Part shown: positions 1-63,725 of the stretch, in pieces
Layout: each line of letters starts with the position of its first letter
Position numbering within the stretch: position 1 is the stretch's first letter
Position numbers and translations under genes: made by a program
Assembly (NCBI GenBank): GCA_964106915.2
Contig: OZ066919.1
Origin: Podarcis gaigeae
Taxonomy: Eukaryota
Direction: 5' to 3' (one strand)
DNA length: 64,000 nucleotides
The notes under the pieces: model-generated
The model's database searches: none
Told to the model about the DNA's origin: nothing
What the model saw: the letters and a program-made list of their open reading frames with translations, nothing else

Positions 1-1347
1 TACACTTGGAAGGCTTGTTATAAAAGAAGCATCTTTGACAGGCACTAAGAGGGCAATGCAAAAGGTGTCTGCCTGTCAGTTTCTCCTTGGGTGCTCAGTA
101 ATGTATGATTATTTTAGCCTTTACAGTTTCTTCACTGCTTGAATTGTGATCTGTTGCACACTTCCTCATGCCTGAGAAATATAATGAAAAGCACCTCTCT
201 CTCTCACCCTCTCCACCACATTTGCACTCTCCCACATTTGACCTCTAGTTTGTTATCTTCGAGCCTTTGGTTAGCTATAATCAACAATCTCTTCTGTGGT
301 GTCCACTTTAGCGATGGTTGTCCCAGCAGCCATATCTATGGTAACAGGTGGACTTTACTCGGATCAAATGCATTGAGACATGAGTGTATTCTGCTACTCA
401 TTTAGCCAGGAAGAGCAAACACTGTCTTTAACTTGGTACTTTGCCAAAGGAGTATCTTAAGTAGCTTTTATGGGTTGCTCCAAACCACCTTTTATTCAGC
501 ATTCATCCTGATTAGCGTGCAAAAGCTTATGTGGTGGTTAGGCCACACTATGCGTTTATAGCACATGGCTTCTCCACAAAGAATCCTGGAAACTAGTTTC
601 TTAAGCATCCTGGGATTTGTAGCTCTGTGAGGACTAAACTACCAAATGCTGGCTTTATAAAGGATTCTTATTTATTAGGCAGTTATATTATAATGAGCAG
701 ACATCCAGCAAGCATCCTGATTTGCTTGCGGGGTGTTTAGTCATCTTCCTGACTATTGTTTGTTCATCCCATACATTTCAATATCCTGTCATCCTATCAC
801 TTTCCTAAATCCAAAGAGTCCTTTGTTTTTAAAGTGTTACGGCAACAGTTTTTAAATCCACTTTAATTGCACAAACCTTTTGTTCCGGTGTGTGCTTGAA
901 TCCGTCCCACAAAATAGTGACAGCCTGAAGGCACTTTTAGTGATCTGGTCCTTGAGTTACATGTTGTGGTGGAGCAAATGAGGGGTGGTCCCAGTACCCA
1001 TCCGCTGCTTGAAGATTTGCTTGGGGCCTCATTCCCAGATGCTCCTCACAACTTGTGGATGTGAGTGCCTGTTGACTGTTTTCTCCCACTGGTTCCATCA
1101 AGAGTTGTTTTCTTAATGTTAACTGTCACACATGGAAGAGGAATATCACAGGAATTGTGGCTGGAAGGGCCACAGTCTTGATAACAGTTGCCACCCACCT
1201 CTCTCTGCACCTAGTGGTGTGTGTGTATATCTGTCACAGAAACTTGCTAATCACATTGGCATCCCCTTGCTGGGTCTGAGAAAAAAAGGTGCATCAAGTG
1301 TAGCATTCTGCTCTCAGTGTCCAACAGAATGTCTATGGGAAGCCTGC

Positions 1348-1718
1348 AAAGGACCCCTGGACGGTTAAGTCCAGACAAAGGTGACTATATGGTTATGACA
1401 CTTATCTCGCTTTCAGGCCAAGGGAGCCGGCATTTGTTCACAGACAGCTTTCCGGCTCATGTGGCCAGCATGGCTAAACCGCTTGTGGCACAACAGGACA
1501 CCATGATGGAAACCAGAGTGCAAGGAAACGCCTTTTACCTTCCCGCCACAGTGGTACCGATTTATCTACTTGCAGTGGTATGCTTTTGAATTGCTAGGTT
1601 GGCAGAAGCTAGGACAGAGGAACAGGAGCTCACCCCATCGTGTGGATTCAAACCACTGACCTTCCAATCAGCAAGCCCAAGAGACTTTGTGGTTTAGACC
1701 ACAGCGTTACCCACTCCC
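1348..1718 (-). mobile_element. Sauria SINE (diverged copy)
   Basis: Aligns by eye with the copies at 29934-30275 and 59820-60177; tRNA-like head at the right end. Confidence 0.85.
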
Positions 1719-1949
1719 TTGGGAAGCCTACAAGCACCATGAGGGTGCAATACCACTCTCCCATTTAGCAAGTGCAACCACAGAGCAATTTCTCCCTTAC
1801 CCCACACACGAATTCCCAGACCAGAGCCACCCTCATTTGCCTGGAGCACCCACCCCACAACATTCACAGACTATTCTTCTGAGAGCACTGCCAGCTCCTG
1901 CCAGTCTGCTACGACATCCAGTGCTTCCTGCCCAAAGGCCCTGTCCTTA

Positions 1950-2135
1950 AGAACCACCACCACAAGGGCAAGACATACTGCCTATCTGATCATAGCAGCC
2001 TCCAGCCAATGCTGCCACTCTTGCAGGCCATGGCGCAGTGGTTTCAGGCTGGGGAAGTGGTGGGGCCCAGGACTGGAGGAGGCCTTTACCCAGGCTTCCT
2101 GAGCAGCTGGCCTGGCACTTTCCAGATAAGCTTCC
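1950..2135 (+). promoter_or_regulatory. Candidate MPL thrombocyte-type promoter: RUNX/ETS/E-box/GATA cluster
   Basis: ACCACA (RUNX) 1959-1964, GGAAGT (ETS) ~2053-2058, CTTCCTG (ETS) ~2095-2101, CAGCTG (E-box) 2104-2109 and AGATAAG (GATA) 2124-2130, about 210-390 bp upstream of the ATG. Mammalian MPL promoters are known to use GATA, ETS and RUNX sites. Confidence 0.5.
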
Positions 2136-2342
2136 CTTGCACAGGTCCAGCAACAAAGGTTCAGAGCTTACGTTCACTGGAACAAAAAGCCAAGCAGTCC
2201 CTGTCTGCTACCTCAGCAGGAGTGCAGGCCACTGATGTATCCATGTGTCCAATGTTCTGCCAGAGCATATACTGTCGACACCAGCAGTGCGGAGGGACAA
2301 GATTTTGACTTGGGTCTGATCCTGGATGTACCTTCTAGTAGG

Positions 2343-5300
2343 ATGGCAGTTCCTCTCTGCTTGGTGAGGCCACTGCTTGCCATACTCCTGCTCATCTCTT
2401 TGCCTGTGCTGAACTGTGTCTACATCACAGATGAAGGTAAGATTACAAACTGCTACTACTGTCCATGGTTTAGGGCAGAGATTTCCAAACTTTTCATGTT
2501 GGTGACATACTTTTTAGACATTTGTCATTTCACAACACAGTCATTCAGTTTTACTAGCAAACCGGAGATTAAACTAGCCCCTTTCCTGCCCTGGGAGGAG
2601 CTTGGGGTACATTAGCAGAACACACCTACGCGCTACAGCCGACACACTAATGTGTCACGACACAATTTGGAAAGCTCTAGTTTAGGGGAAAAGGTGAGGA
2701 TGAAGCATGGCTTTTGTTACTTTTTTTGTGGCCCTAGAAACTTCATTAGGAAAGCCAGGCAGGTGAATATTCTTGTGGACGAAGGGCATCTGGGCAGAGG
2801 GGGTGGGATGGGGCTTTCTGGGAGCACCACAACAACCAGCTTTCCTGGATTAGGGTTTCCAATTTCTGATGAAAAATGCCCTCTAGGCTTTTGATCACTG
2901 TGGCATGCAGATGTCATCAGGCAAGGCTTCTCACAATGCAGTGATGAAAGAAGACACTCTTTTCAAACTATTCTCTACCATGCCCTTATTAAAACATAAC
3001 TCTGGACTGTACCATGTGGGATCAGGAAACTTTGGAATAAATGAAGCTCTTCCATACTCGTGGATCAAGCTCCACCTTGGCTGCTGCAGAAGGAGGGTTA
3101 GGAGAAAACCCTTTCATGTCCTATGCCAGGATGAGGCCCAGCACAGAGAACTATAGATCCCAAAACTATAAGTGCTGAAAATTGTAACTCTGTTGAGATA
3201 AACTACAGTTCCCGGGATTCTTTGGGGAAAGTCCTGTGCTTAACATGTATGGTATAGTCACAGCCTCGGAGATCTACCTGCACACCTCCACCAAAGTGTT
3301 TCCTCTGTACGTTATTCAGGGCCACCAGTCAACAGAAGAGCAAGGAACATGTGGAAAGATGGAATAGGTTACAAAGGCTCAAAGTGAATGTGGGTACCTA
3401 AAGCGCCAAATTGTTTCGTGTCCAGATCAATGCAGTTCTTTACTAGGATCAGCTATTAAGTGCAGTCTTTCCAGATGATGAGAATTTTCCTCACTACAAC
3501 TCTCAATTAGGGAGAAACAAGATCTAACTAGAATTCAGGTTTGTTTTTCCAGCACCCTTTATTCTTCACTGTCCTTTGTATAGAGTGGTTGTGTTTCCTC
3601 CCTTCTTCTGTGGGGGCACAAGGGTGGGGGGATAGGAACATAAAAAAGAACATAAAAGTTCTGTCTATGTTCAAAACTTGAATAGCTCATAGGATCTTTT
3701 CAGCTTTTCTGATGGATATGATACTGTTAGAAATACTACAAAGACAGAAACAAAAATCTAAAGAAATTCTTCTTTGACTTAGCGTGAATGATAAACCTGA
3801 AATTGTTTAAGGGTAAGATGTGAAATTATTGACTAAATATATATATAACAGTGGTACCTCAGGTTACATACACTTCAGGTAACATATGCTTCAGGTTACA
3901 TACGCTTCAGGTTACAGACTCTGCTAACCCAGAAATAGTGCTTCAGGTTAAGAACTTTGCTTCAGGATGAGAACAGAAATCGTGCTCCGGCGGCGCAGCG
4001 GCAGCAGGAGGCCCCATTAGCTAAAGTGGTGCTTCAGGTTAAGAACAGTTTCAGGTTAAGTACGGACCTCCGGAACGAATTAAGTACTTAACCTGAGGTA
4101 CCACTGTATTCAGATTTCACAGATATCCTATGTTCTGCAGTGTTACTTCTCAAACCCTTAATTCTGATGGTATAATTCATTTTACCTTCTTGCATTGTTT
4201 GTTCCTACAGAATTATTGATCCCCTTGATTTCTTTGTTTCCCTCTCAAATCTTTTAAAATTAGGGCTCCCTCCAGATGTCCTTTTTATTGTGTATTTGTC
4301 ATTACCCATGATTCTGCCTGCAAAAGTGTCATGGTGAACCTATACTGCTTTGTTTCCAGTCAATGCATGTCCCATAGTCTCCTGCTTTCCTTTCTCACTG
4401 GGATTCTAGATACAATATTTACCCTTATAAGACACTCCTGAAACACTGTGGGAGGGGAAAGCAGCTAGTGAATTATTTTCGTGGGGATGGGTTAATGAAC
4501 CCTGTTACTTCTCCACTCAAAATCTTAGCGTCTTGAGACTGCTTTTTTAAAGTCATTGTTTTCATTACATTTGCGTATAATGTGTAGTTTGTTCCCTTAT
4601 CTTGCTTCCTCCCACTCTCACTGGGAGTTCTATCTCCCTGGGACAGGAAGCTGCTCCCCCCCCCCCCCGCCCCAAGTTTGCCACAAAACCACATGGCTAT
4701 TTTGGGATGTTTGTGAACACTTCCTGGCAGCAAATACTTTGGGGTGGTGGTAATCATTAGCTCCCCCTTTCCCTAATCCTTTCCCAACCCACTCAAACAA
4801 CTGTGTTGCCAATATGGATGTTCACATAAAAAAACAGAAACAGAATGACAACAGGTAGGGTCAGTACCGTTTGCATTTGTGGGTTATGAAAATCAGTACT
4901 GTTAGATGGATGTGTGGTGTACAAAAATGAAAATACATTATAGAAGGGATGAGGAACCTATGGCCCTCCAGAGGTTGCTGGACTACAACTCCCATCAGCC
5001 CTAAACATTGGCCATGCTGGCTGAACTAATAGGAGGTGGAGTACAACAGGTCCTCATTCTTGCAATATAGAGAAAATTAATACTGTTGGGGGGAGCATTT
5101 TAATGAGCCACTAAACTTCACGGCAGAAGGGGGTCATAACAGGGCCAGTGACTGCAGGCTGCACCACCCACCCACCCACCCACCCCAAGATGCAGGGCGG
5201 AGTCTTTGCATGTTACCTGGTACGTACTTATTCAGAGAACTGCACCCAAACATTCAGGTTGGTGCCAAAGAATGAGAGCGTGGAGGTGCACTTTGAATAA

Positions 5301-8300
5301 CCACAGCCAGCCCCCCACCTTTATTGAGCAACTTCTTGCACCTCACCCCACACCCACTTAATTCAAAATTAACTAACATTATTTGATCCCTTCCTGTGGC
5401 TAACTTTTATCTAGATCATCAGCTGTTCTCCTCAGCAGAAACTAGTTTGTCAGCTTCTAAGACTGTATGAACCCCTCACCCCATTTGCTCTGCAGTCATC
5501 ATTATACTCCCACTGCTTGTTTGGGAAGTGGCAAAGCCCACATTATCCACAATCCGTATCTCTCTTGTGGTTTGTTATGAAATAAATACTGTGTTTTGGT
5601 GCATTTTCCCACACACCTGCTTTGAACCAAATTGAGAAAAAGAACCACCTAGTTGCATTTCAAGCCAGTGATGTGTACACAGCCTAACACACATTTCTCT
5701 CCACTGCAGTGTGTCTTCTGGAAATTCTATCATGCATTTGATAAGGATATTTGATTTTATATTCCTTCCCTCCCCATTATCATAGCTACCTCACCCCTGT
5801 GTTGGCAAACAGGATCTATGCCCTGCCCACTCCCTCCCAAGGTGTAATGAATGTATGGGGGTTGCTCGTGCGTAAGTTGCTACCCTGCCTGGCTAGTTAG
5901 CCTGGTCAAACCTTTCCTGCCTGGACAGCCCTTCACTTTGTGGCTGTTCAGTCGCTAGCAGAATCCGTGAGTGGACGTTTCTTAAACTTCTTCCAGCACA
6001 AAAGCTCTTTGACCCCAAGTCTACGCCTACTTTCCCTGCGTGGAAGTCTTCTGCGCAGAGTGGGTGTGGGCAGAGGAGGACCAGTGCTCTCCCCGCTGGT
6101 CTCCAGCGAAGAGTCCTGGAGACCCCTCTCCGATTCCCCCCACCGCTCCCCTTTATCCCTGGTGTTACGCTGATTTCCTTCCCCAGCTGAAGAGTTCCCT
6201 CTCTCCCTGCTTGCCCCTTCTCCGGCATCGCTTGGGAGCTCTGCCTCCACTCCTGGCTCCAATGTCAGTTCCCTGACACAAGGCTAACTGTAGGGGGAAA
6301 ATTTTGTTGTAATCACTAAGGGGAGAAGGCTTAAATTTCACCACCACCACCCCAGCATGCTGTGTTCCCATTGAACATTGCTGCTTGGCACTTGCAATTT
6401 TTTTTTAAAAAAAAACAATGTTAGAGAAACCATTAGCATCATGTGTAGTTACAGGTAGGTAGTTGTATTGGTCTGCCATAGTCAAAACAATTTTTTTTAA
6501 AAAAAATTATTTCCAGTAGCACCTTAGAGACCAACTAAGTGTATCTGAAGAAGTGTGCATGCACACGAAAGCTCATACCAATAACAAACTTAGTTGGTCT
6601 CTAAGGTGCTACTGGAAAGGGGAAAAAATATTTTGTTTCATTGTGTGTAGTTAGGCTCCTAGAAACATAAGAAGTTTCATTAGAGTAGGCCAAACTATTG
6701 GTCTATCTGGCCTGGAACTGTCCAAAAGTGAAGAAGCATTTCACATCATGCACTACCTGATTTTCTTAGCACACTGAAGAAAGGCCCTACAGGAGTGGTG
6801 CCTTCTCCCCTTCTGAAACTTCCCCACCCCCAAAGACTGGAGCATGGCTATAAAACTCTTATTCCAAGCTGACTGGAGCCCTGGAGAGAAGCACAACCCG
6901 TGACAGGCTGTGGTGACTTACTGGCCATTTCTTACAGCTTGTGCTTGTACAAACACTTGTATTAATCTCTATGACCACAGTTCTATTTGCCATGCGCTTG
7001 CTTCCTCTCATCTCACAGTCCAGATGACTTTGGGTATTTGTGGTTACAATTATCGCCCTATTCAGCTTGAAGACTTATGCAAGCTTCTCTTCTCTTTTCT
7101 TTTCTTTTCTTTTCTTTTTCTCTCCCCACACAGAGGCTGATCTATTGGCTAAAACAGCTCAGGACATCTTCTGCTTTTCTCGCACCTTTGAGGATCTCAC
7201 TTGCTTTTGGGATGAACCAGCACGCGTGGAAGGGGCATATCGGCGCTTCTTCTATACATACAAAGGGTGAGAGGTTTTTATACATGGCTATGATCCATAG
7301 TCCAGGCTGCCTTGAAGGTTTCCAGTAGAAGAATACTGCAGCTCCTTGAGGTTTCCCACTGCCCACTCTCTTCATCTCCACAGAGACAGAAGCCGAGAAT
7401 GCACTCTGCGGTCAGCAAAGCACAGTGATGGAGGCTGGCGCCATGTCTGCATCTTCCCCAGGAACCATCAGGATATTCTGCTCTTTGCAGAACTCCACGT
7501 CGAGGTGTTAGACACCATTAGTAATCACACCACTCGCTCTCAGGATCTCTCAGTGGCGTCTGTTGGTAAGCCTTCCTTTGGATTTGAGAAGCAAGGAAAT
7601 GTGGCGTGACATTAAAAACAATTATCAAACACTTAACAATCACAAAACATGTGATGGCTCCTGAAAATATGTATCTCAGGTGTCATCCTTAGGACATGGT
7701 CCTAAATCCCACCCACCACTGGCAGGGCTTGTTGAGTGGTACAGCCATCACTGCATCAGGATTCCACCACTCACAGATATACCATTAGCAAGCTTCCTGT
7801 CTGCACACACATTTGGAGGGCAAAAGGGGGACAGCCGAGTGAAGGGACATCTCTGCCTAATCCAGCCCCCAGCCTGGCAAACAACAACCAACAGTACTGA
7901 GGATGAGGCCATATGTATCTCCCTGGGAAGAAGTTCAAAGGGGTGGGGCACTGGCACCTGCCAGCCAAACAACTCTTGCTGGTGGATTAGGGAGCAGAGC
8001 CTGCCCTAAGGATCTCACAGTAAAATCTGAGCATGAGGAGGAAAGCCAGAGGCAAAGGGAAGGGTGGACAAAGTGGAGGTCACATAAATAAGAAATGAAG
8101 TTACACCTACTTAAGCTTCACACTTGAGGATGTGACACCATCAAATTCTAGCAAACTTTCATTTCTACATTTGGCTCTGTCCATTTGGCTGCCCTTTTCC
8201 TAGAGGCTAAGAAGTAGTGCATCCGGCCAGAATGCGGATGCCTAGATTGACATACCACCAGAGCTTGCCCTTGCCTGCTGGAGAACTGCAGCCCACCTTT

Positions 8301-11300
8301 CTACTGCTTTGTTGTTGTGTGCTGCAGTCCCAAGAAAGCAACCTTGCAGCAGACACAGCCAAGTCCCCAGCATTCTTGCTTGCCTCTGCAGATTCCTGCA
8401 CTCCCAGTTGTGACTACCACACAGAGAAGCATTCCACTGTAAATATACTGCATATACAGGAGAAATGTAACAAATCCACATATTATGTATTTATTAGAAC
8501 ACTACTTGGGGATTTACTGTTGCTTCAGAGATTGAAACAATGGTAATATTTACTGCACCACTTAAGTGTTGAAATTATATCTTCATCTGTCTTTGTTTGT
8601 AAATCCCATAGTTTTCTATCTACGTTTGTAAATCCCACAATTGTCTATCTATGCTTAGGTCTGATTGCTCCACCAATGAATGTAACAGTGGTGTGGCCTG
8701 GAGTGGCACGACAGTTGCACGTAGCCTGGACCCCCCCACCTTTCCACTATGCAGACTTCTTGGCCTATGAGGTTCTTTACAGTGCTGAAGGCTCCACAGA
8801 GCCACCATCCAGGGTATGGCTTATATGGGGCAAGGGAAGTTTTGGTGTATGACACCCGCAGGGCAGCTGGCTGTGTCTAAAACTCTAAGCAGGACACCAA
8901 GCTCTGTGGCTATCAAGTAGGGGTGAAGGAGCAGTTCAATGCGATTTGCGTTTATAGGTGAGCCTACTTATTTTGCACATTCTGCAACACTACACAAACC
9001 TTTGAACTCTACAATTCTATGATCCTATGAAAACACAGACATCCTTCCAAATTCAGAATTCTCTGAATTTTGCAGTGCAGTTCTCCAGCCAAATAGTGTG
9101 TACAAAAACACAAATACTAGGATGAAATGTGCCTGCAAATGCACATATTACTGAAAATAGCATACAAAAATGCATTAGATAAGGGAAAGCACCTTTGCCA
9201 AAATGTGTGTATTATGCAAATGAAGCAGCGTAAAAGGGGATAAATTTGCAGTAAAATGTTGCTAAATTTTCATGAGCACTTATTGTTAAACAATTTGCAA
9301 ACAGATGAGCTATCGGGGGAAACTACTTCCACTAATCCTTACATGTGCCTGATTCCATCCCTCATAGATGGAAGTGAAGAACAGCCATACATGCCGCCTC
9401 AGAGACCTGCTCCCTGGGCACTGCTACCACATCCAAGTGCGCACCAAGCCTGATGGCCTCTCTCTTGATGGGCTCTGGGGACCATTGTCTCCAGTAGTAT
9501 TAGCAGAGACACCCCATCTCCCTGGTAAGGGTCCTGTTGTTTGGTAAACAGTTGTCATGGGGATCTTAGTTGCATTACTTTCAAACAATGCACTATAACT
9601 GCATACATATTGTTACACGCCACCCCAGTCTCCAAGCAGTGTGAGTTTCAAGTTGTTTCAGGTGCTTAGCCGGGGTTTGGTTTCCTCAGAATGAGGGACA
9701 TTGGAGACTGTAGTGTCTTTAGGATACATGGTTTAGTTATTCTTTCTATATAGCTCTGTTTCTCCATAATAACTTATTTGGAGTAGTGCCTAGATGTAGA
9801 GGTGAAACGGATACAGGGCAAGGGGGAGTTGAGGTTGAATCCTGGCAAGATGAAAGCACTGTGGGTGAGTGGTTCTCATGTTAATTGCCTACCCTGGATG
9901 GGGTTGCATTCCCCCTGGAGGAGCAAGTTCACAGTCTGTGGGTTCTTCTCAATCTAGCTTTGTCACTGGGAGTCCAGGTAGCCCCAATGGCTAGAAGTGC
10001 CTTTTATCAGCTGCAATTGGAATAGCAGGTGTGACCATTCCTTGACTGGGAAAGCTTGGTCACAGTAGTTAATATACTGGTTACTTCAAGACTGGAATTC
10101 CATATTGCACTCTATGTGGGGCCTCCCTTGTGCTTAATTCAGAAGCTACAGTTAGTACAGAGTGCTGTGGTACAATTGCTGGCAGGAAACTCTCCTCAGA
10201 GAGATCTGCACTGGTAGCCAATTTGCTGCCAGGCCAAGTCCAAAGCGTTACTGTTAGTCTATAAAGCCCTTAGCAGCTTGGGATCAGTTTACTTGCAAGA
10301 TTGCCATACCCCATATATGCCCACTCAACCACTTCGAGCTGCGGAAATGGCATTCTTACAAGAGTTACATACCATATTTTTCCATGTATAACATGCCCCC
10401 ATGTATAAGACGCCCCCTATTTTGAGGGACTCCAAATTAAGAAAATGGGGGAAGGTGGCACAGAGTTGTTTAAAGCAAACAAGTGTCTGTCTGCCTGCTC
10501 ACCAACAGTAGCCAGCAATCGTACACCCAATTGCCACACAAAAGGCAATCCAAAGCAACCTTTGCTGCAGCAACCAATCACATGCCCAATTGCCACAATG
10601 GCAGCTAACCCAAACAATTAAACTCACTTCCACAGGATGCAAGGGTGGTTTTAAAAGAGGGTTAGGCAAATTAATGGCGGGTAAGGCGGTCAATGACGGC
10701 TATGCTCTGCCTCCACAGTTGGACGCAACAATGCTTCTGAATAGCAGTGGCTGGAAACCACAGGAGGGGAGAGGCCTCTTTGGCCCAGGTCCTGCTTGTG
10801 GGTTCCCCACAGGCATCTGGTTGGCCACTATGGGAACAGGTTGCTGTCTTAGATGGACTACTGGGCTGATCCTGCAGACACTACCAGTTTTTATGTGGTT
10901 ACACTAGGTAATATGAAATGCTTCCAAGAAGCACTTGTTAAATCTTCAAAGCTTTATTGCTTTACAATAAAGAGCAAACACCAGAATATGCCAATCACAA
11001 AAAAGAAATGCTTATTAAACTATGAAAGGTAATATATGAAATGCTTCCAGGAGATGCTTGTTGAATTATGAAAGGTAATAAGCACCTGGACTAATTAAAA
11101 CAGCATACATCTCCCTTGCAAAATAAGAGATGAAGAGCAATAGGAGTATCTAATTCAATCTTCACTGACTTCCTCAGAGGAAGGTAAATCTCACTGCTGT
11201 TGTAATCTGTATTTTGACCCAATAAAGTTTTTCATTAGATTTCTATCCCACTCTTCCTCCCCAAGGAGATCTGGGCAGCTCCTTTTAAGATCAGGGGCCT

Positions 11301-32271: not shown

Positions 32272-35200
32272 CTAGTTGGCTTTGGCTTTGCCGTTAGAAA
32301 TGGCACCATTCTCATGAAAGCCATTCTGCTGAGGTTGTGTCATGACCTTGGGCAGACGCTTGCCTCTGGTGTACGAATGGTACCAGAAGTTGGAGAAGAG
32401 GAGGAAGAAGATAACGCCGTAAATCCAGATGAGGTGGATGAAGATTGGGTACTGGTAGTCACAGCTGGGCATGAAGTAGTACTGGGAGATGTGGATGGAG
32501 ACGAGCACAAACTGCAACTGTGAGTGGAGGCAAGAGAAAGTTATGGAGTAAAGAAGGCAGCTATATCCCGTTCCCCTACCCACGGGAGGAAATAGACAGC
32601 CCTAGGGACAGGTAGTTCAAGCTGGGAGAGGGAGAACACAGAAAGTCTAGCACAGGAAACAATTGCTAAATAAGTTCCTGTAGCTCTTGCCAAGAGAAAG
32701 GAAATAAGTCAGACCAATGTCCCAGGCTGGTTGTACCATCCAAAGTTGGGAGTTCTTGGCATGAGTGGCCTGGTCCTTTCCCTTTCCTACTCACCAGTTG
32801 AATGGCAGTGATGTGCTTCTTCCACCACAGGTACTTTTGATAGGCAGGCCCTGCAGCTGACAGCGCATAGTAAAAGTACATCACCACATGTACTATCGAG
32901 TTCACTAAAGCATGAAATGAGCCCATTCCTCCTGCAGGCCAACAAATAAGAGAAAGGTTAAATTCAAATGGTAAAGGAAGAGCTGAGATATGACCTACAT
33001 ACATATAGCAAGACCAGAAAGGAATTCTTCTGGAACATCAGGCACCACGAATATGGTGGTTATGGTGGTAATAGAGTAAAAGAAGTCAGAAATGTTTGTT
33101 ATTGTTGTCTTTGTGGGGCTTTTTTTTTGGGGGGGGTGTTCCTAATCATCTCCAGTTAGTATTCTGTGAAATGCTATTTTGAAGTGCCCACGACAAATTT
33201 AGATTTCCAAATGAGCCCCCAGGCCCCAAAAAGTTGAGAACCTTTGATATAAAAATTATACAATATTAACTTTTACCATTTTAAAAGCTCTGTACTTTAT
33301 TCCAAAAGTTAACAATTCATCACCATTATCTTTCACCATGCAGAGACTCAAGGTGGCATACAGATAAAATAGAAACAGCAAAAAGCATAGATAGGCCCAT
33401 TAAAAATNNNNNNNNNNNNNNNNNNNNNNNNNNNNNNNNNNNNNNNNNNNNNNNNNNNNNNNNNNNNNNNNNNNNNNNNNNNNNNNNNNNNNNNNNNNNN
33501 NNNNNNNNNNNNNNNNNNNNNNNNNNNNNNNNNNNNNNNNNCACCTGGGCCAAATTTGGCACCCCACCACCAGCTCCAGGGAAGCACTGAATGGTGGAAC
33601 ACATGCAGGAAGGTCACCTGTTCATTCTTCTTTCTTAGGATGAAGATCACCTGGAAGCAAGAGATTAGAGTGAGATGGGCTTTTCATTTTGGCCAGTGGG
33701 CCATTACTCCAGAATGTATAAAAGAGAGGAAGCACCATTGCAGACTCCAAATAGTAACAATCCAATCATCTTCAGTGAGCTAATAAATATCAACTGTACA
33801 TACTGTAAGAAAATGAACAAAAACCACCCTATCCCAATGAAATACCTACTAGTGTTAGTAGAATATAAACGTTAGTCACCATTAATTTGCACAAATGATC
33901 CATGTCAGAATAAATAGGGCTGTCTGACCACATCTGGTAAGTGTTGTTAAGGCCAATACAAATGTGTAGCCATACCCATTTCTGCTCCAAACAAGATACT
34001 GTAGGCCTCAAAAAACAAGCACTTACTGTGTCAAGCAGTTCAATGTACTTGGAGATGATGAAGACCCAGGCTACATGGACCATCTACCAAGAAAGAGCAA
34101 TGTCAGAAATCCTAGTCATCAAAACATAAAGCTTCACCCTACTTTTCTACCCTCATTTTTCCTTCTTTCTGAATCCCCATTTCTCCTCTTGAAGTAATCC
34201 CACTACAGAATTGCAACATTTGCCAAGCTTGTGCCTACATTAAAAAAACAACAAGAACACTCTCACACATGGGGGAATGTGAGACAAGATATGGGGTTGA
34301 AAGAATGAAAGAACTTACCCGAAGGGCCATGGGATTCTGGGATTGGTCCACAGGGTCACACCTCCAAGTGTAACCAGTCAACCAGCCTGACATAAGGAAC
34401 TGCAACAAGGAGCCACCATTCAGATACTTCTCAATGATACTACATTCACCAGCTCAGCTTTGTAAACATACCCACAAAAATTACTTGCCTAAAATTTGTG
34501 TTACTAGTTTTATAAGAGGCTAATCAGCTACGTTTCCATGCTCACTGAAGAGAAAGAGAAGCTTCTTCTCTATGCTCAACATTAAAATGCAGGCAACTAT
34601 CCTATTAGCAGGAAAATTAAAATAAAATAAATAAAAGTAGCTTGCTATCGAACAGGCTGGAGGAGGATAGACAAAGCTGAGGGACAAGCTTTCCTTCCTT
34701 AGCAGCCACCAGCAGTCCATTCATTCATCTGCATAGAACTCTTAGGTCACCAATGGCTACCAAGCTAGTGCCGAAATGGAAGGTTGTACAAGATACATGT
34801 CATACAGCTTCTCTGCCATGCAAATCTCTCTTCTAGGCACTTCTATGAGCAACCATTGGAACAAAACCCTGTGGAATTTTCAGCTGTCACAGCAATCCAA
34901 ATCCCTTTTGCGCTGTGTTGTGTGTGTGCGCGCGCGCGTGCACGCACACACATACATACTAGAGAGGTGTCCCTTCATCCAGGGCTGCCAGCCTCCATAA
35001 GCCACCACCTGCAGAGTAACACCAGTGTCACTGCTGACACAGGGTTCCTCTTTCTGCCCATTGAATGGGCAGGCAGAAGGGCTGCTGGCAGCAGTCTACA
35101 GAAAGCCCCCAAACAAGGCTTTGCAGGGATGGTGCTGGGATAGCCCTGCCCCTATCATGTGCTAATAGCACTGGGCCCAATCCGGGTCTGATTGCTGCAC

Positions 35201-48694: not shown

Positions 48695-48875
48695 CATAGG
48701 ATGCTTCCTCCTGAGTCAGACTACTGGTCCATCTAGCTCAGTACTGTCTACACTGACTGGCAGCAGCTCCTCAAGGTTTCAGATAGGGGCCTACCAGGAG
48801 ATGCTGCCAGAGGTTGAATCTGGGACCTTCTGCATGCAAAGCAGATGCTCTCCCACTGAGCTATGGCCCCTCCCT
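48695..48875 (-). mobile_element. tRNA-derived squamate SINE (Squam3-like)
   Basis: Minus strand reads GGGGCCATAGCTCAGTGGGAGAGCATCTGCTTTGCATGCAGAAGGTCCCAGATTCAA; decayed relatives at ~19735-19840, ~28500-28620 and ~49750-49890. Confidence 0.65.
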
Positions 48876-61252: not shown

Positions 61253-61498
61253 AATCAGGCAGAGGGCCTTCTCAGTGGTGGCGCCCGCCCTGTGGAATGC
61301 CCTCCCATGAGATGTCAAGGAAATAAACAACTACCGTACCTGTCTTTTAGAAGACATCTGAAGGCAGCCCTGTTTAGGGAAGTTTTTAATGTTTGATTCT
61401 ATTTTTAATATTCTGTTGGAAGCCACCCAGAGTGGCTGGGGAAACCCAGACAGATGGGCAGGATATAAGTAATGATGATGATAATGATGATGATGATG
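61253..61498 (+). mobile_element. L2-type LINE 3' fragment with (GAT)n tail
   Basis: Close match to 63475-63690. Confidence 0.88.
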
Positions 61499-61624
61499 TT
61501 AAGTTTCTTGTTAAACCCAGATACTTCCACTCAGGCAAGCACACGTTTTGCTAACCTCTTTCCATTCTCTAAGGGCATACCTTCCTTGATTTTTAAAGCT
61601 GTAATAAACCTAGAATATGGCAAT

Positions 61625-63725
61625 CCTTTGCATGGAGCCCGGAGAGCCCCGTGGTTTTCCACGGATCTGAGGGCAATGAAACAATCGTTGAGACGGCTAG
61701 AGCGCCGGTGGCGGATAACTCATTCCGAATCTGACCGGACACAGGTTAGAGCTCAACGTCGAGCCTACCAAGTGGCGATAGCGACGGCAAAGAAGAATTT
61801 CTTCGCCGCCTCTATTGCATCTGCAGAAAACAGCAGCAGGAGACTTTTTCAGGTGGTTCACAATTTAGCGGAACCACCTGTAACATCGGGGCCCAGTACG
61901 GGCCACATATTCTCCTGCAATGATTTTGCAAAGTTTTTTGCAGATAAAATCGTTCAGATTCGGGAAGAAGTAGACTCCACCGTGGGAGCAGGGCCGGGGC
62001 GGGAGAGTGCTAGAGTTCTGTCTAGTCTAGTTGTGTGGGATCAATTCCAATCTGTTACCTCCGAGGATGTGGACAGGCTGCTTGGACGAGTGAAACCAAC
62101 CACCTGTCTCCTGGATCCTTGCCCATCCTGGCTTATAAAAGCTAGCCGGGAAGGACTGGGCGATGGGCTTCGTGGGGTGGTGAATGCTTCCCTCCGTGAG
62201 GGAGCCTTCCCAGACCCACTGAAAGAGGCGGTTATTAAACCGCTTCTTAAAAAACCATCTTTAGATGCGGCCACAATGGCCAACTATCGCCCAGTCTCAA
62301 ATCTTCCATTCTTGGGCAAGGTGATAGAGCGAGCGGTTGCCGAACAACTCCAGGCACGCCTGGAAGAAGCGGACCATTTGGATCCCTTCCAGTCGGGATT
62401 CAGGCCTCATCATGGGACTGAAACTGCCTTGGTCGCACTGGTTGATGATCTCCGGCGGGCTAGGGACAAAGGTGAGAGCTGTTTCCTAGTTCTGCTGGAT
62501 CTCTCAGCGGCGTTTGATACCATCGACCGTAACATCCTTCTGGACCGCCTTGAGGGGCTGGGAGCTGGGGGCACTGTCCTACAGTGGTTCTGCTCCTTCC
62601 TCCTGGGCCGTGTTCAGAAAGTGGTGGTGGGGGATGAGTGTTCAGACCCCTGGGCTCTCACTTGTGGGGTGTCTCAGGGTTCTGTCCTCTCCCCCATGCT
62701 TTTCAATATTTACATGCAGCCGCTGGGAGAGATCATCAGGAGGTTTGGGCTGGGTGTTCATCAGTATGCGGATGATACCCAGCTCTACCTCTCTTTTAAA
62801 TCAGAACCAGTGAGGGCAGTGAAGGTCCTGTGTGAGTGTCTGGAGGCGGTTGGAGGATGGATGGCGGCTAACAGATTGAGGTTGAATCCTGACAAGACAG
62901 AAGTACTGTTTCTGGGGGACAGGAGGCGGGCAGGTGTGGAGGATTCCCTGGTCCTGAATGGGGCAACTGTGCCCCTGAAGGACCAGGTGCGCAGCCTGGG
63001 AGTCATTTTGGATTCACAGCTGTCCATGGAGGCACAGGTCAAATCTGTGTCCAGGACAGCTGTTTACCAGCTCCATCTGGTACGTAGGCTGAGACCCTAT
63101 CTGCCTGCGGACTGTCTCGCCAGAGTGGTGCATGCTCTGGTTATCTCCCGCTTGGACTACTGCAATGCACTCTACGTGGGGCTACCTTTGAAAGTGACTC
63201 GGAAACTACAACTAATCCAGAATGCGGCAGCTAGACTGGTGACTGGGAGCGGCCGCCAAGACCATATAACATCGGTCTTGAAAGGCCTACATTGGCTCCC
63301 AGTATGTTTCCGAGCACAATTCAAAGTGTTGGTACTGACCTTTAAAGCCCTAAACGGCCTCGGTCCAGTATACCTGAAGGAGCGTCTCCACCCCCATCAT
63401 TCTGCCCGGACGCTGAGGTCCAGCGCCGAGGGCCTTCTGGCAGTTCCCTCATTGCGAGAAGCGAAGCTACAGGGAACCAGGCAGAGGGCCTTCTTGGTAG
63501 TGGCGCCCACCCTGTGGAACGCCCTTCCAGCAGATGTCAAAGCGATAAACAACTACCTGACATTCAGAAGACATCTTAAGGCAGCCCTGTTCAGGGAAGT
63601 TTTTAACGTGTGATATTTTACTGTATTTTTGGTTTTTATGGAAGCCGCCCAGAGTGGCTGGGGAGGCCCAGCCAGATGGGCGGGGTATAAATAATAAATT
63701 GTTATTATTATTATTATTATTATTA
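61625..63725 (+). mobile_element. 5'-truncated L2-clade LINE with uninterrupted reverse transcriptase ORF
   Basis: About 660 stop-free codons to TGA at 63613: NYRPVSNL, QSGFR, LLDLSAAFDT, QGSVLSP, YADDTQLY, SRLDYCN, LHWLP; short 3' UTR and (TAT)n tail; no endonuclease domain. Confidence 0.95.

What the first reader, a model, noticed from the sequence alone, without database searches (positions are those of the whole stretch)
6511..6617. Hammerhead ribozyme motif on the sense strand of MPL intron 1, inside a 30-bp perfect hairpin
Seen: 6541-6578 reads GUAU CUGAAGA A GUGUG-CAUG-CACAC GAAA GC UC AUAC. That gives a full hammerhead core (CUGANGA...GAAA...UH), helix I GUAU/AUAC, a 5-bp helix II and a vestigial helix III with the palindrome AGCU. 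Predicted cleavage is after C6574. A perfect inverted repeat (6511-6540 / 6588-6617) closes the motif and would extend helix I across a one-sided bulge. Known: Penelope-like retroelements carry minimal type I hammerheads that often cleave as dimers through a palindromic helix III. Inference: the motif is transcribed as part of MPL pre-mRNA, so it could cut the intron or pair with other transcripts carrying the repeat, giving TE-dispersed ribozyme control of host pre-mRNAs. It may equally be an inert TE relic.
Basis: partly seen in the sequence, partly recalled or inferred. Interest (0 to 1): 0.8.

Follow-up and report, generated by a model that had tools for sequence, protein, structure and literature searches.

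The report
Penelope-type hammerhead fold-back in MPL intron
A 109-base hairpin in the first intron of a lizard's thrombopoietin-receptor gene is a truncated copy of a very abundant Penelope-like jumping gene. It carries that family's usual tiny hammerhead ribozyme motif, so it is real but ordinary, and nothing suggests it controls the gene.

Summary
A perfect 31-bp inverted repeat (6510-6540 / 6588-6618) encloses a 38-nt stretch (6541-6578) with every invariant hammerhead core base. It has a 4-bp helix I, a 5-bp helix II, one extra A after A9, and no real helix III, only the palindrome AGCU.

These are the published traits of the minimal hammerheads of metazoan Penelope-like elements (PLEs). 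My descriptor finds this one site in the window and none in 300 shuffles. No Rfham... Rfam hammerhead model matches.

Contigs from three related species give summed depths about 10,000 to 60,000 times the single-copy flanks, so the family is very high copy. Other copies lack the left arm or fold back at other points. The right arm with its flank is present in two species about 2% diverged.

Best reading: a 5'-truncated PLE insertion with the short inverted copy typical of PLEs. It lies sense to MPL, 516 nt upstream of exon 2. No second motif exists in the 64 kb to form the dimer these ribozymes need. Published lizard PLE hammerheads cut only with PLE protein and leave no RNA-seq ends, so it is probably inert here.

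The scan already holds many notes of the same thing in this genome. Interest is low.

The parts
6510..6540 (-). Left arm. An inverted, strongly 5'-truncated copy of the last 31 nt of the repeat unit; its outer end at 6510 corresponds to the unit's 3' end.
   Evidence: 100% complementary to 6588-6618; blastn-short gives the same result. PLE insertions often carry an adjacent inverted 5'-truncated copy (PMC8557442).
6538..6540 (+). Junction between the inverted and the direct copy, with a possible 3-nt microhomology (AGT).
   Evidence: In longer copies elsewhere the sequence upstream of 6538 continues differently (39 contigs in X1). Other copies end at 6541 (68 contigs in X1, 62 in X6). See loose ends. 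The microhomology is an inference.
6541..6578 (+). Minimal type-I hammerhead motif. Helix I 6541-6544 / 6575-6578; core CUGAAGA 6545-6551; extra A 6552; helix II 6553-6557 / 6562-6566 with loop 6558-6561; GAAA 6567-6570; GC 6571-6572; U16.1 6573; C17 6574. Predicted cut between 6574 and 6575.
   Evidence: The traits match the minimal hammerheads of metazoan PLEs (PMC4209133).
6579..6587 (+). 9-nt spacer (CAAUAACAA) belonging to the direct copy. It forms a one-sided bulge between helix I and the long stem.
   Evidence: MFE structure.
6588..6618 (+). Right arm, the 3'-terminal part of the direct copy. Many other copies end at 6616/6617.
   Evidence: Loose ends behind 6616/6617 occur in 86-122 contigs per run. 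Single-copy contigs of species B and D run from 6590/6591 into the flank up to 7078.
7134..7266 (+). MPL (thrombopoietin receptor) exon equivalent to human exon 2. Acceptor cag|AG at 7133/7134, donor GT at 7267.
   Evidence: sequence; best PDB match is thrombopoietin receptor 8g04_B, E = 5.9e-11, chain residues 4-44. A spliced RNA contig in X15 supports it.
2343..2436 (+). Candidate MPL exon 1 (signal peptide, phase 1, donor AAG|GTAAGA). This would make intron 1 run 2437-7133.
   Evidence: It is the only candidate with both a strong donor and a hydrophobic core in heuristic scans of 1-7133. Inferred; not confirmed with RNA.

Best explanation
The 109-bp hairpin is one insertion of a very abundant Penelope-like (PLE) or PLE-mobilised retroelement family of this lizard lineage.

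The direct part (about 6538/6541-6618, + strand) is a strongly 5'-truncated copy of the element's 3' region. It contains the family's minimal hammerhead motif and about 44 nt downstream of the cut site. The left arm (6510-6540) is a still shorter copy of the same 3' end in inverted orientation, so both outer ends of the hairpin are element 3' ends.

This is what is expected if the PLE protein cut both strands of an AT-rich target and reverse transcription started on both, as shown in vitro for the Anolis element. The two cDNAs would then have been joined head to head. That step is inferred.

The hammerhead is therefore a passenger of the element. In its parent it sits at the pLTR/ORF junction; an ATG lies in loop II here, as in the Anolis element.

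In MPL intron 1 it is transcribed in sense as part of the pre-mRNA. It has no helix III of its own, no partner copy in the transcription unit, and probably needs PLE protein. It is therefore most likely catalytically silent, or nearly so, and without effect on MPL.
For: [quoted passage not shown]
- Family size: summed word depth in the bin 6539-6672 is 2.67 million (X1), 0.77 million (X4) and 3.1 million (X6), against about 80, 12 and 75 in the single-copy flanks. In the putative RNA run X15 it is 37,708 against about 5 on MPL exons.
- Not a fixed-end element: other copies stop at 6541 with variable AT-rich flanks (agreement 0.38). Others continue upstream of 6538 into a longer parent. Others fold back at different points (opposite-strand joints 6540|6583, 6542|6583, 6546|6579).
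- PLE insertions are known for strong 5' truncation and an adjacent inverted 5'-truncated copy (PMC8557442).
- The Anolis PLE protein cuts and extends both strands, prefers AT-rich DNA, and its ORF starts in stem II of the hammerhead (PMC11167929). The flanks here are 66-71% A+T, with a T8A8 tract just to the left.
- Age: the right arm plus flank is present in contigs of two other species about 2% diverged.
- Inertness: no second motif or copy exists in the 64 kb. Monomeric minimal hammerheads are inactive and dimers weak (PMC4209133). The Anolis PLE hammerhead needs PLE protein and leaves no RNA-seq ends.
- A competing dimer through the 14-nt palindrome of helix II is strongly favoured in cofolding: -30.6 kcal/mol against 2 x -6.8.
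Against: - No sequence comparison with a curated PLE consensus (Repbase, Dfam) was possible, so 'PLE' rests on motif type and insertion architecture.
- No RT/GIY-YIG ORF of this family is in the window.
- No clean target-site duplication was found (best flank alignment p about 0.07).
- Rfam hammerhead models do not match.
- Nothing here measures cleavage. Only contigs were available, and they cannot show RNA ends.
- The sharp 5' boundary at 6541 in many copies is not explained by random 5' truncation.
- Depth sums are not copy numbers.
Confidence: 0.8

Rival explanations
1. Functional intronic ribozyme. The hairpin clamps helix I, the 9-nt bulge acts as loop 1, and the motif cuts MPL pre-mRNA. 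It would do so alone, with PLE protein, or by pairing AGCU with another copy's transcript, and so tune MPL or a network of TE-bearing genes.
For: The core is intact and lies sense to MPL. The MFE fold places the core in a three-way junction closed by a 31-bp stem. The insertion is retained in at least 3 related species. The family is present in putative RNA contigs. The Anolis PLE hammerhead does cleave when PLE protein is present.
Against: There is no helix III in cis, because a 2-nt loop cannot close. There is no partner in the 64 kb. Activity of such motifs is weak or absent in vitro, and no RNA-seq ends are seen even for the active lizard PLE (PMC4209133, PMC11167929). Retention over about 2% divergence is the neutral expectation. 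Earlier notes list copies antisense to genes too (unchecked). Retrozyme and PLE derivatives are depleted from introns in Xenopus (preprint 10.64898/2026.07.22.740005).
Confidence: 0.05
2. A miniature inverted-repeat DNA transposon (MITE) whose 31-bp terminal inverted repeats enclose a loop that resembles a hammerhead by chance or by capture.
For: It has perfect 31-bp terminal inverted repeats, small size and high copy number. It shows sub-threshold resemblance to TE-derived miRNA hairpin models such as mir-559, at 47 bits against a gathering score of 95.
Against: Many copies lack the left arm, and others fold back at different positions, which fixed TIRs would not do. No target-site duplication was found. 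The loop carries every specific trait of PLE minimal hammerheads. Inverted 5'-truncated copies are a known PLE signature.
Confidence: 0.07
3. A small-RNA source. The perfect 31-bp stem in the intron is processed by Drosha or Dicer, or edited, giving small RNAs that act on the thousands of related copies.
For: It is a very stable perfect hairpin (-62.7 kcal/mol), transcribed within a gene. Rfam miRNA-precursor models give their best, though sub-threshold, scores here.
Against: All miRNA matches lie far below the gathering scores and are driven by stem shape. There are no small-RNA data. This is a possible side effect of the insertion, not a rival origin.
Confidence: 0.05

Closest known systems
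Minimal hammerhead ribozymes (min-HHR) of metazoan Penelope-like elements (Cervera & de la Pena 2014, PMC4209133; Lunse et al. 2017, cited in PMC6765202)
   Same: Type-I topology, full catalytic core, an unpaired nucleotide between A9 and G10.1, a G10.1-C11.1 pair, a 4-bp helix I, no helix III beyond a palindromic 15.1-16.1 tetrad (AGCU), very high copy number, and copies mostly occurring as single motifs from truncated elements.
   Different: Helix II is 5 bp with a 4-nt loop (a 14-nt perfect palindrome), against 7-8 bp in the Schistosoma families. The 2014 paper names turtle and snakes among reptiles, not this lizard family. Activity was not tested.
PAc, the Poseidon-clade PLE of Anolis carolinensis (PMC11167929)
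   Same: A lizard PLE with a hammerhead at the pLTR/ORF junction and a start codon within stem/loop II. It prefers AT-rich targets. It cleaves and extends both target strands, which can explain head-to-head inverted copies. Its ribozyme is dispensable for insertion and dependent on protein.
   Different: No sequence similarity was tested. The cut site lies 16 nt after the A of the ATG here, against 26 bp in PAc. Copies here end about 59 nt after the ATG, against RT start sites 111-118 nt into the PAc ORF. It is therefore probably a different family or a non-autonomous derivative.
Non-LTR retrozymes of animals (PMC7229834; preprint 10.64898/2026.07.22.740005)
   Same: Short non-autonomous repeats with type-I hammerheads related to PLE pLTRs. 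Monomer copies are dispersed, including in introns.
   Different: Retrozymes are defined by tandem units bounded by two hammerheads that can give circular RNA. Here there is a single motif and no tandem.
L1 'twin priming' inversions
   Same: An inverted 5' segment joined to a direct 3' segment of one retroelement, explained by priming on both target strands and joining at microhomology.
   Different: A different enzyme class (GIY-YIG endonuclease with a telomerase-like RT). Here both outer ends are element 3' ends, and the arms are exact complements.

Membership tests
Hammerhead ribozyme (general) | Invariant core C3 U4 G5 A6 N7 G8 A9 / G12 A13 A14 / A15.1-U16.1 / H17 | tested here: met
   Positions 6545-6551, 6567-6570 and 6573-6574 read CUGAAGA, GAAA and UC. 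My descriptor finds this hit.
Hammerhead ribozyme (general) | Three helices around the core | tested here: inconclusive
   Helix I has 4 bp and helix II 5 bp. Helix III is absent in cis, because A15.1 and U16.1 enclose only GC. It could form only in trans through AGCU.
Hammerhead ribozyme (general) | Match to the Rfam hammerhead covariance models (RF00163, RF00008, RF02275-7) | tested here: not met
   No hammerhead family at the gathering score, nor at E <= 10 on 6400-6720. This is expected, since these models require a helix III.
Hammerhead ribozyme (general) | Site-specific self-cleavage | not testable with these tools
   Only contigs were available; they cannot show RNA ends.
PLE minimal hammerhead (min-HHR) | [quoted passage not shown] | tested here: met
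   A6552; trait listed in PMC4209133.
PLE minimal hammerhead (min-HHR) | G10.1-C11.1 pair, and palindromic 15.2-16.2 | tested here: met
   G6553-C6566; G6571 and C6572 within AGCU.
PLE minimal hammerhead (min-HHR) | Large consensus families within a genome, with covariation | tested here: inconclusive
   Very high summed depth in three species. No other copies could be read, so covariation was not examined.
Penelope-like element insertion | ORF with a telomerase-like RT and a GIY-YIG endonuclease | tested here: not met
   None at this locus, which is a fragment of about 80 nt plus 31 nt. The only RT ORF in the window (61472-63613) is LINE-like.
Penelope-like element insertion | Strong 5' truncation with an adjacent inverted 5'-truncated copy | tested here: met
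   Arms; variable fold-back joints and arm-less copies elsewhere; definition in PMC8557442.
Penelope-like element insertion | AT-rich target and variable target-site duplication | tested here: inconclusive
   Flanks are 66-71% A+T with a T8A8 tract. No significant duplication (p about 0.07).
Penelope-like element insertion | Sequence homology to a curated PLE consensus | not testable with these tools
   No Repbase or Dfam library and no eukaryotic genome collection is on hand. Metagenome and viral scans gave 0 hits.
MITE (DNA transposon) | Fixed terminal inverted repeats and a constant target-site duplication in all copies | tested here: not met
   Copies without the left arm and copies with other fold-back points; no duplication.
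Non-LTR retrozyme | Two or more hammerheads in direct tandem bounding a unit | tested here: not met
   A single motif in the 64 kb.
miRNA precursor (mir-559, mir-4788 and others) | Rfam gathering score | tested here: not met
   47.4 bits against 95, and 38.4 against 91.

The most novel reading that the evidence does not exclude
The fold-back form is not neutral. The 31-bp stem holds helix I shut and its 9-nt bulge supplies a loop-1-like contact to loop II. The motif would then cut MPL pre-mRNA when PLE protein or a trans copy is present, or the stem would feed small RNAs. Either way, activity of an abundant retroelement family would be linked to expression of the thrombopoietin receptor and of other genes that carry sense copies.
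Probability: 0.03. Interest if true: 0.6.

Novelty: new member of a known kind. Interest (0 to 1): 0.15.

Why it matters
It matters little on its own. It is one more copy of a known class, the Penelope-type minimal hammerheads, which have been described since 2014 and are already noted many times in this genome by the scan.

Two small points are useful:
- This copy is a clean example of the head-to-head 'two 3' ends outward' architecture. That fits the both-strand cleavage and extension reported for the Anolis PLE protein.
- Such hairpins break short-read assemblies and imitate miRNA precursors in Rfam-type scans, so annotators should mask them.

If intronic sense copies were ever shown to cleave in vivo, thousands of host transcripts would be affected. 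Nothing here points that way.

Tried and rejected
- **Rfam:** the whole window at gathering gave only a tRNA-like SINE head at 48799-48870 (-). Region 6400-6720 at E <= 10 gave no hammerhead, only sub-threshold miRNA-hairpin models driven by the perfect stem. I rejected these as identity.
- **Second copy or partner in the window:** two patterns with up to 3 mismatches, blastn-short, and strict and relaxed descriptors all found none.
- **Public collection scans:** No further copies could be fetched, so no covariation test or covariance model was possible.
- **Target-site duplication:** the best local alignment of the flanks is not significant in this low-complexity A/T context.
- **Dimer modelling:** RNAcofold cannot represent the trans helix III between two closed junctions. 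It returns the competing duplex through the helix II palindrome instead.
- **Papers:** Lunse et al. 2017 (PMC5785218) is not held. The Cervera 2014 supplements are not held. The PAc GenBank supplement is space-broken, so it could not be compared.
- **Earlier findings:** look-ups by sequence and for autonomous PLE notes came back blank.
- **RT ORF at 61472-63613:** I checked it as a possible autonomous PLE. It is LINE-like, with best PDB matches to LINE-1 ORF2p and R2 and none to telomerase.
- **Exons:** I searched exon 2 alone, by reference, and did not join exons into a spliced model.
Full report
**What is in the sequence**

Positions 6510-6540 and 6588-6618 form a perfect 31-bp inverted repeat with 47 nt between the arms.

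The first 38 nt of the middle (6541-6578) map onto the hammerhead numbering without any adjustment to the core:
- Helix I is 6541-6544 paired with 6575-6578.
- C3 to A9 is CUGAAGA at 6545-6551, followed by one extra A at 6552.
- Helix II is five pairs, 6553-6557 / 6562-6566, opening with G10.1-C11.1, with a CAUG loop.
- G12 A13 A14 A15.1 is 6567-6570, then G and C (6571-6572), U16.1 (6573) and C17 (6574).

There is no helix III, because A15.1 and U16.1 enclose only two bases. The four bases AGCU are self-complementary.

The minimum-free-energy fold of 6505-6625 is the long stem closing this three-way junction, across a 9-nt one-sided bulge at 6579-6587. Its energy is -62.7 kcal/mol, z = -11.3. 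The core by itself is no more stable than shuffled sequence.

**Is it more than chance?**

I wrote a descriptor from the published traits of minimal hammerheads. It requires helix I of at least 4 bp, CUGANGA, 0-1 extra base, helix II of at least 4 bp opening with G-C, GAAA, a palindromic insert of 0, 2 or 4 nt, UH, and the return strand of helix I. It hits this site only, on both strands of the 64 kb, and hits nothing in 300 dinucleotide-preserving shuffles. A much looser version still returns only this site.

I wrote the descriptor after seeing the motif, so the family evidence below weighs more. Rfam's hammerhead models do not match, either at gathering thresholds or at E <= 10 on a 321-nt slice. 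That is expected for a motif with no helix III, but I record it as a failed formal test.

**Family behaviour**

I laid Logan contigs of four public runs on 5601-9600.
- The 134-nt bin holding the motif and right arm collects a summed word depth of 2.67 million in X1 (about the same species; its unique contigs show 0-1 differences). X4 gives 0.77 million and X6 gives 3.1 million; these are two other species whose unique contigs differ by about 2%.
- The neighbouring single-copy sequence lies at about 80, 12 and 75. These sums are not copy numbers, but they show a very high-copy family in all three species.
- In X15 the same bin reaches 37,708 against about 5 on MPL exons. X15 is truly RNA, because one contig joins 7383-7564 directly to 8658-8813. 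The family is therefore well represented in transcripts.

The copies elsewhere do not share the two ends of this hairpin:
- Dozens of contigs stop matching exactly at 6541 and go on into variable A/T-rich sequence (68 in X1, 62 in X6, consensus agreement only 0.38).
- Others continue upstream of 6538 into a shared longer sequence (39 contigs in X1).
- Many end at 6616/6617 on the right.
- Several fold back on the opposite strand at other points (6540|6583, 6542|6583, 6546|6579).

A DNA transposon with fixed terminal repeats would not behave like this. A retroelement with variable 5' truncation and variable inverted partial copies would.

**Comparison with the literature**

Cervera and de la Pena (PMC4209133) defined the minimal hammerheads of metazoan Penelope-like elements. 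They listed features that emerged without being part of their search:
- a conserved G10.1-C11.1 pair;
- palindromic 15.2-16.2;
- a short helix I of 4-5 bp;
- huge numbers of mostly single motifs from truncated elements, sometimes in pairs on opposite strands.

All the sequence features are met here. They also report that single motifs showed no detectable cleavage and that dimers or trimers cleaved only weakly.

Craig et al. [quoted passage not shown]

The in vitro study of the Anolis element PAc (PMC11167929) reports the following:
- The protein cleaves and extends both target strands.
- It prefers AT-rich DNA.
- It starts reverse transcription at an internal site of the RNA.
- The ORF starts in stem II of the hammerhead.
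- The ribozyme cuts only when PLE protein is present and is not needed for insertion.
- Public RNA-seq shows no reads beginning or ending at the ribozyme site.

**Most likely history and mechanism**

The direct copy runs from about 6538/6541 to 6618 and is the 3'-terminal piece of the element RNA, hammerhead included. The left arm is the last 31 nt of the same piece in inverted orientation, so both outer ends of the hairpin are element 3' ends.

I infer that reverse transcription was primed on both strands of a break in the local A/T-rich sequence. The flanks are 66-71% A+T and a T8A8 tract lies just to the left. The two cDNAs would then have been joined, possibly at the AGT shared at 6538-6540. 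This step is inferred, not shown.

An ATG sits in loop II (6559-6561), echoing the PAc arrangement. The short reading frame that follows is open for 31 codons. This is only suggestive.

I found no convincing target-site duplication. The insertion is not new. Single-copy contigs of the two other species start inside the right arm (6590/6591) and run on through the flank to 7078. Whether their left arm and core are intact cannot be seen, because short-read contigs break at the repeat.

**Gene context**

The exon at 7134-7266 on the + strand (acceptor cag|AG, donor GT) encodes the start of the mature thrombopoietin receptor. Its best solved-structure match is 8g04_B, E = 5.9e-11, chain residues 4-44. 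Later MPL exons and CDC20 lie downstream on the same strand according to earlier notes.

A scan for a phase-1 signal-peptide exon upstream finds one convincing candidate at 2343-2436. The RNA contig in X15 carries 133 nt 5' of exon 2, and these do not lie in 6673-7133, where depth is zero.

The element therefore sits 516 nt upstream of exon 2, in sense, almost certainly in intron 1. The position of exon 1 remains an inference. I searched exon 2 alone by reference and did not join the exons.

**Does it do anything to MPL?**

Nothing supports that.
- The motif cannot form helix III alone, and there is no second motif or copy in the 64 kb to pair with.
- In cofolding, two copies prefer an inactive duplex through the 14-nt palindrome of helix II, at -30.6 against 2 x -6.8 kcal/mol.
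- The published activity of this ribozyme class is weak, dimer-dependent or protein-dependent, and no ends were detected in lizard RNA-seq (PMC4209133, PMC11167929).
- From general knowledge, not tested here: slow cleavage inside an intron is tolerated by co-transcriptional splicing, so even weak activity need not matter.
- Retention in species about 2% apart is what neutrality predicts.
- A recent preprint finds PLE-derived retrozyme sequences depleted from introns in Xenopus (10.64898/2026.07.22.740005). That speaks for mild cost rather than recruitment.

I could not test cleavage.

**Rivals**

- A MITE is disfavoured by the variable ends, but it is not excluded without a repeat library.
- A miRNA-like or small-RNA source is a possible side effect of a perfect 31-bp stem. 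The Rfam miRNA matches lie far below threshold and reflect shape only.
- A functional ribozyme in MPL remains possible at a few per cent.

**Novelty and score**

This is a further copy of a known kind. The scan's own index holds 155 notes with 'hammerhead ribozyme', and at least ten describe Penelope hairpins with hammerheads in this same genome. One was followed up as an ordinary Penelope-type element (s1-656169). Those notes are unchecked AI notes and I did not use them as evidence. My own tests lead to the same place. Interest is 0.15.

Noticed in passing
window 5869-6270: Another very high-copy repeat directly upstream of the finding. Summed contig depth is 2.6e5-5.6e5 in X1, against about 80 in the flanks. 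Its identity was not determined. It is separated from the hairpin by single-copy sequence at 6271-6475.
   Followed up: no
window 8951-9218: A third high-copy repeat inside an MPL intron, with many internal skip joints among its copies.
   Followed up: no
window 6385-6408 and 6488-6506: Two near-identical CAA-T8/9-A8 tracts about 100 bp apart, each a self-complementary T/A palindrome (pairs I2 and I3). They flank single-copy sequence. This may be a small local duplication or a favoured PLE target; the hairpin sits right after the second tract.
   Followed up: partly
window 48799-48870 (-): A tRNA-like sequence (Rfam tRNA, 46 bits, E = 1.3e-6) with mismatches in the acceptor stem. It is most likely the head of a tRNA-derived SINE rather than a tRNA gene.
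   Followed up: no
window 61472-63613 (+): An intact 713-aa ORF with a reverse-transcriptase domain (Pfam RVT_1, E = 6.8e-35). Its best solved relatives are LINE-1 ORF2p and R2 proteins, not telomerase. It is a LINE-type element, not the autonomous partner of the hammerhead family.
   Followed up: partly
window 7089-7125: A (TTTCT)n-like pyrimidine microsatellite forms the polypyrimidine tract just before the MPL exon 2 acceptor. Short-read contigs of all runs break there.
   Followed up: no
window 6541 (family-wide): Many copies of the family elsewhere begin exactly at the first base of helix I (6541), not at scattered truncation points and not at the ribozyme cut site (6575). The cause of this sharp 5' boundary is unexplained; it could be a transcription start, a preferred template switch or a subfamily boundary.
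   Followed up: no
window 33408-33541: A run of 134 N (assembly gap or masked).
   Followed up: no
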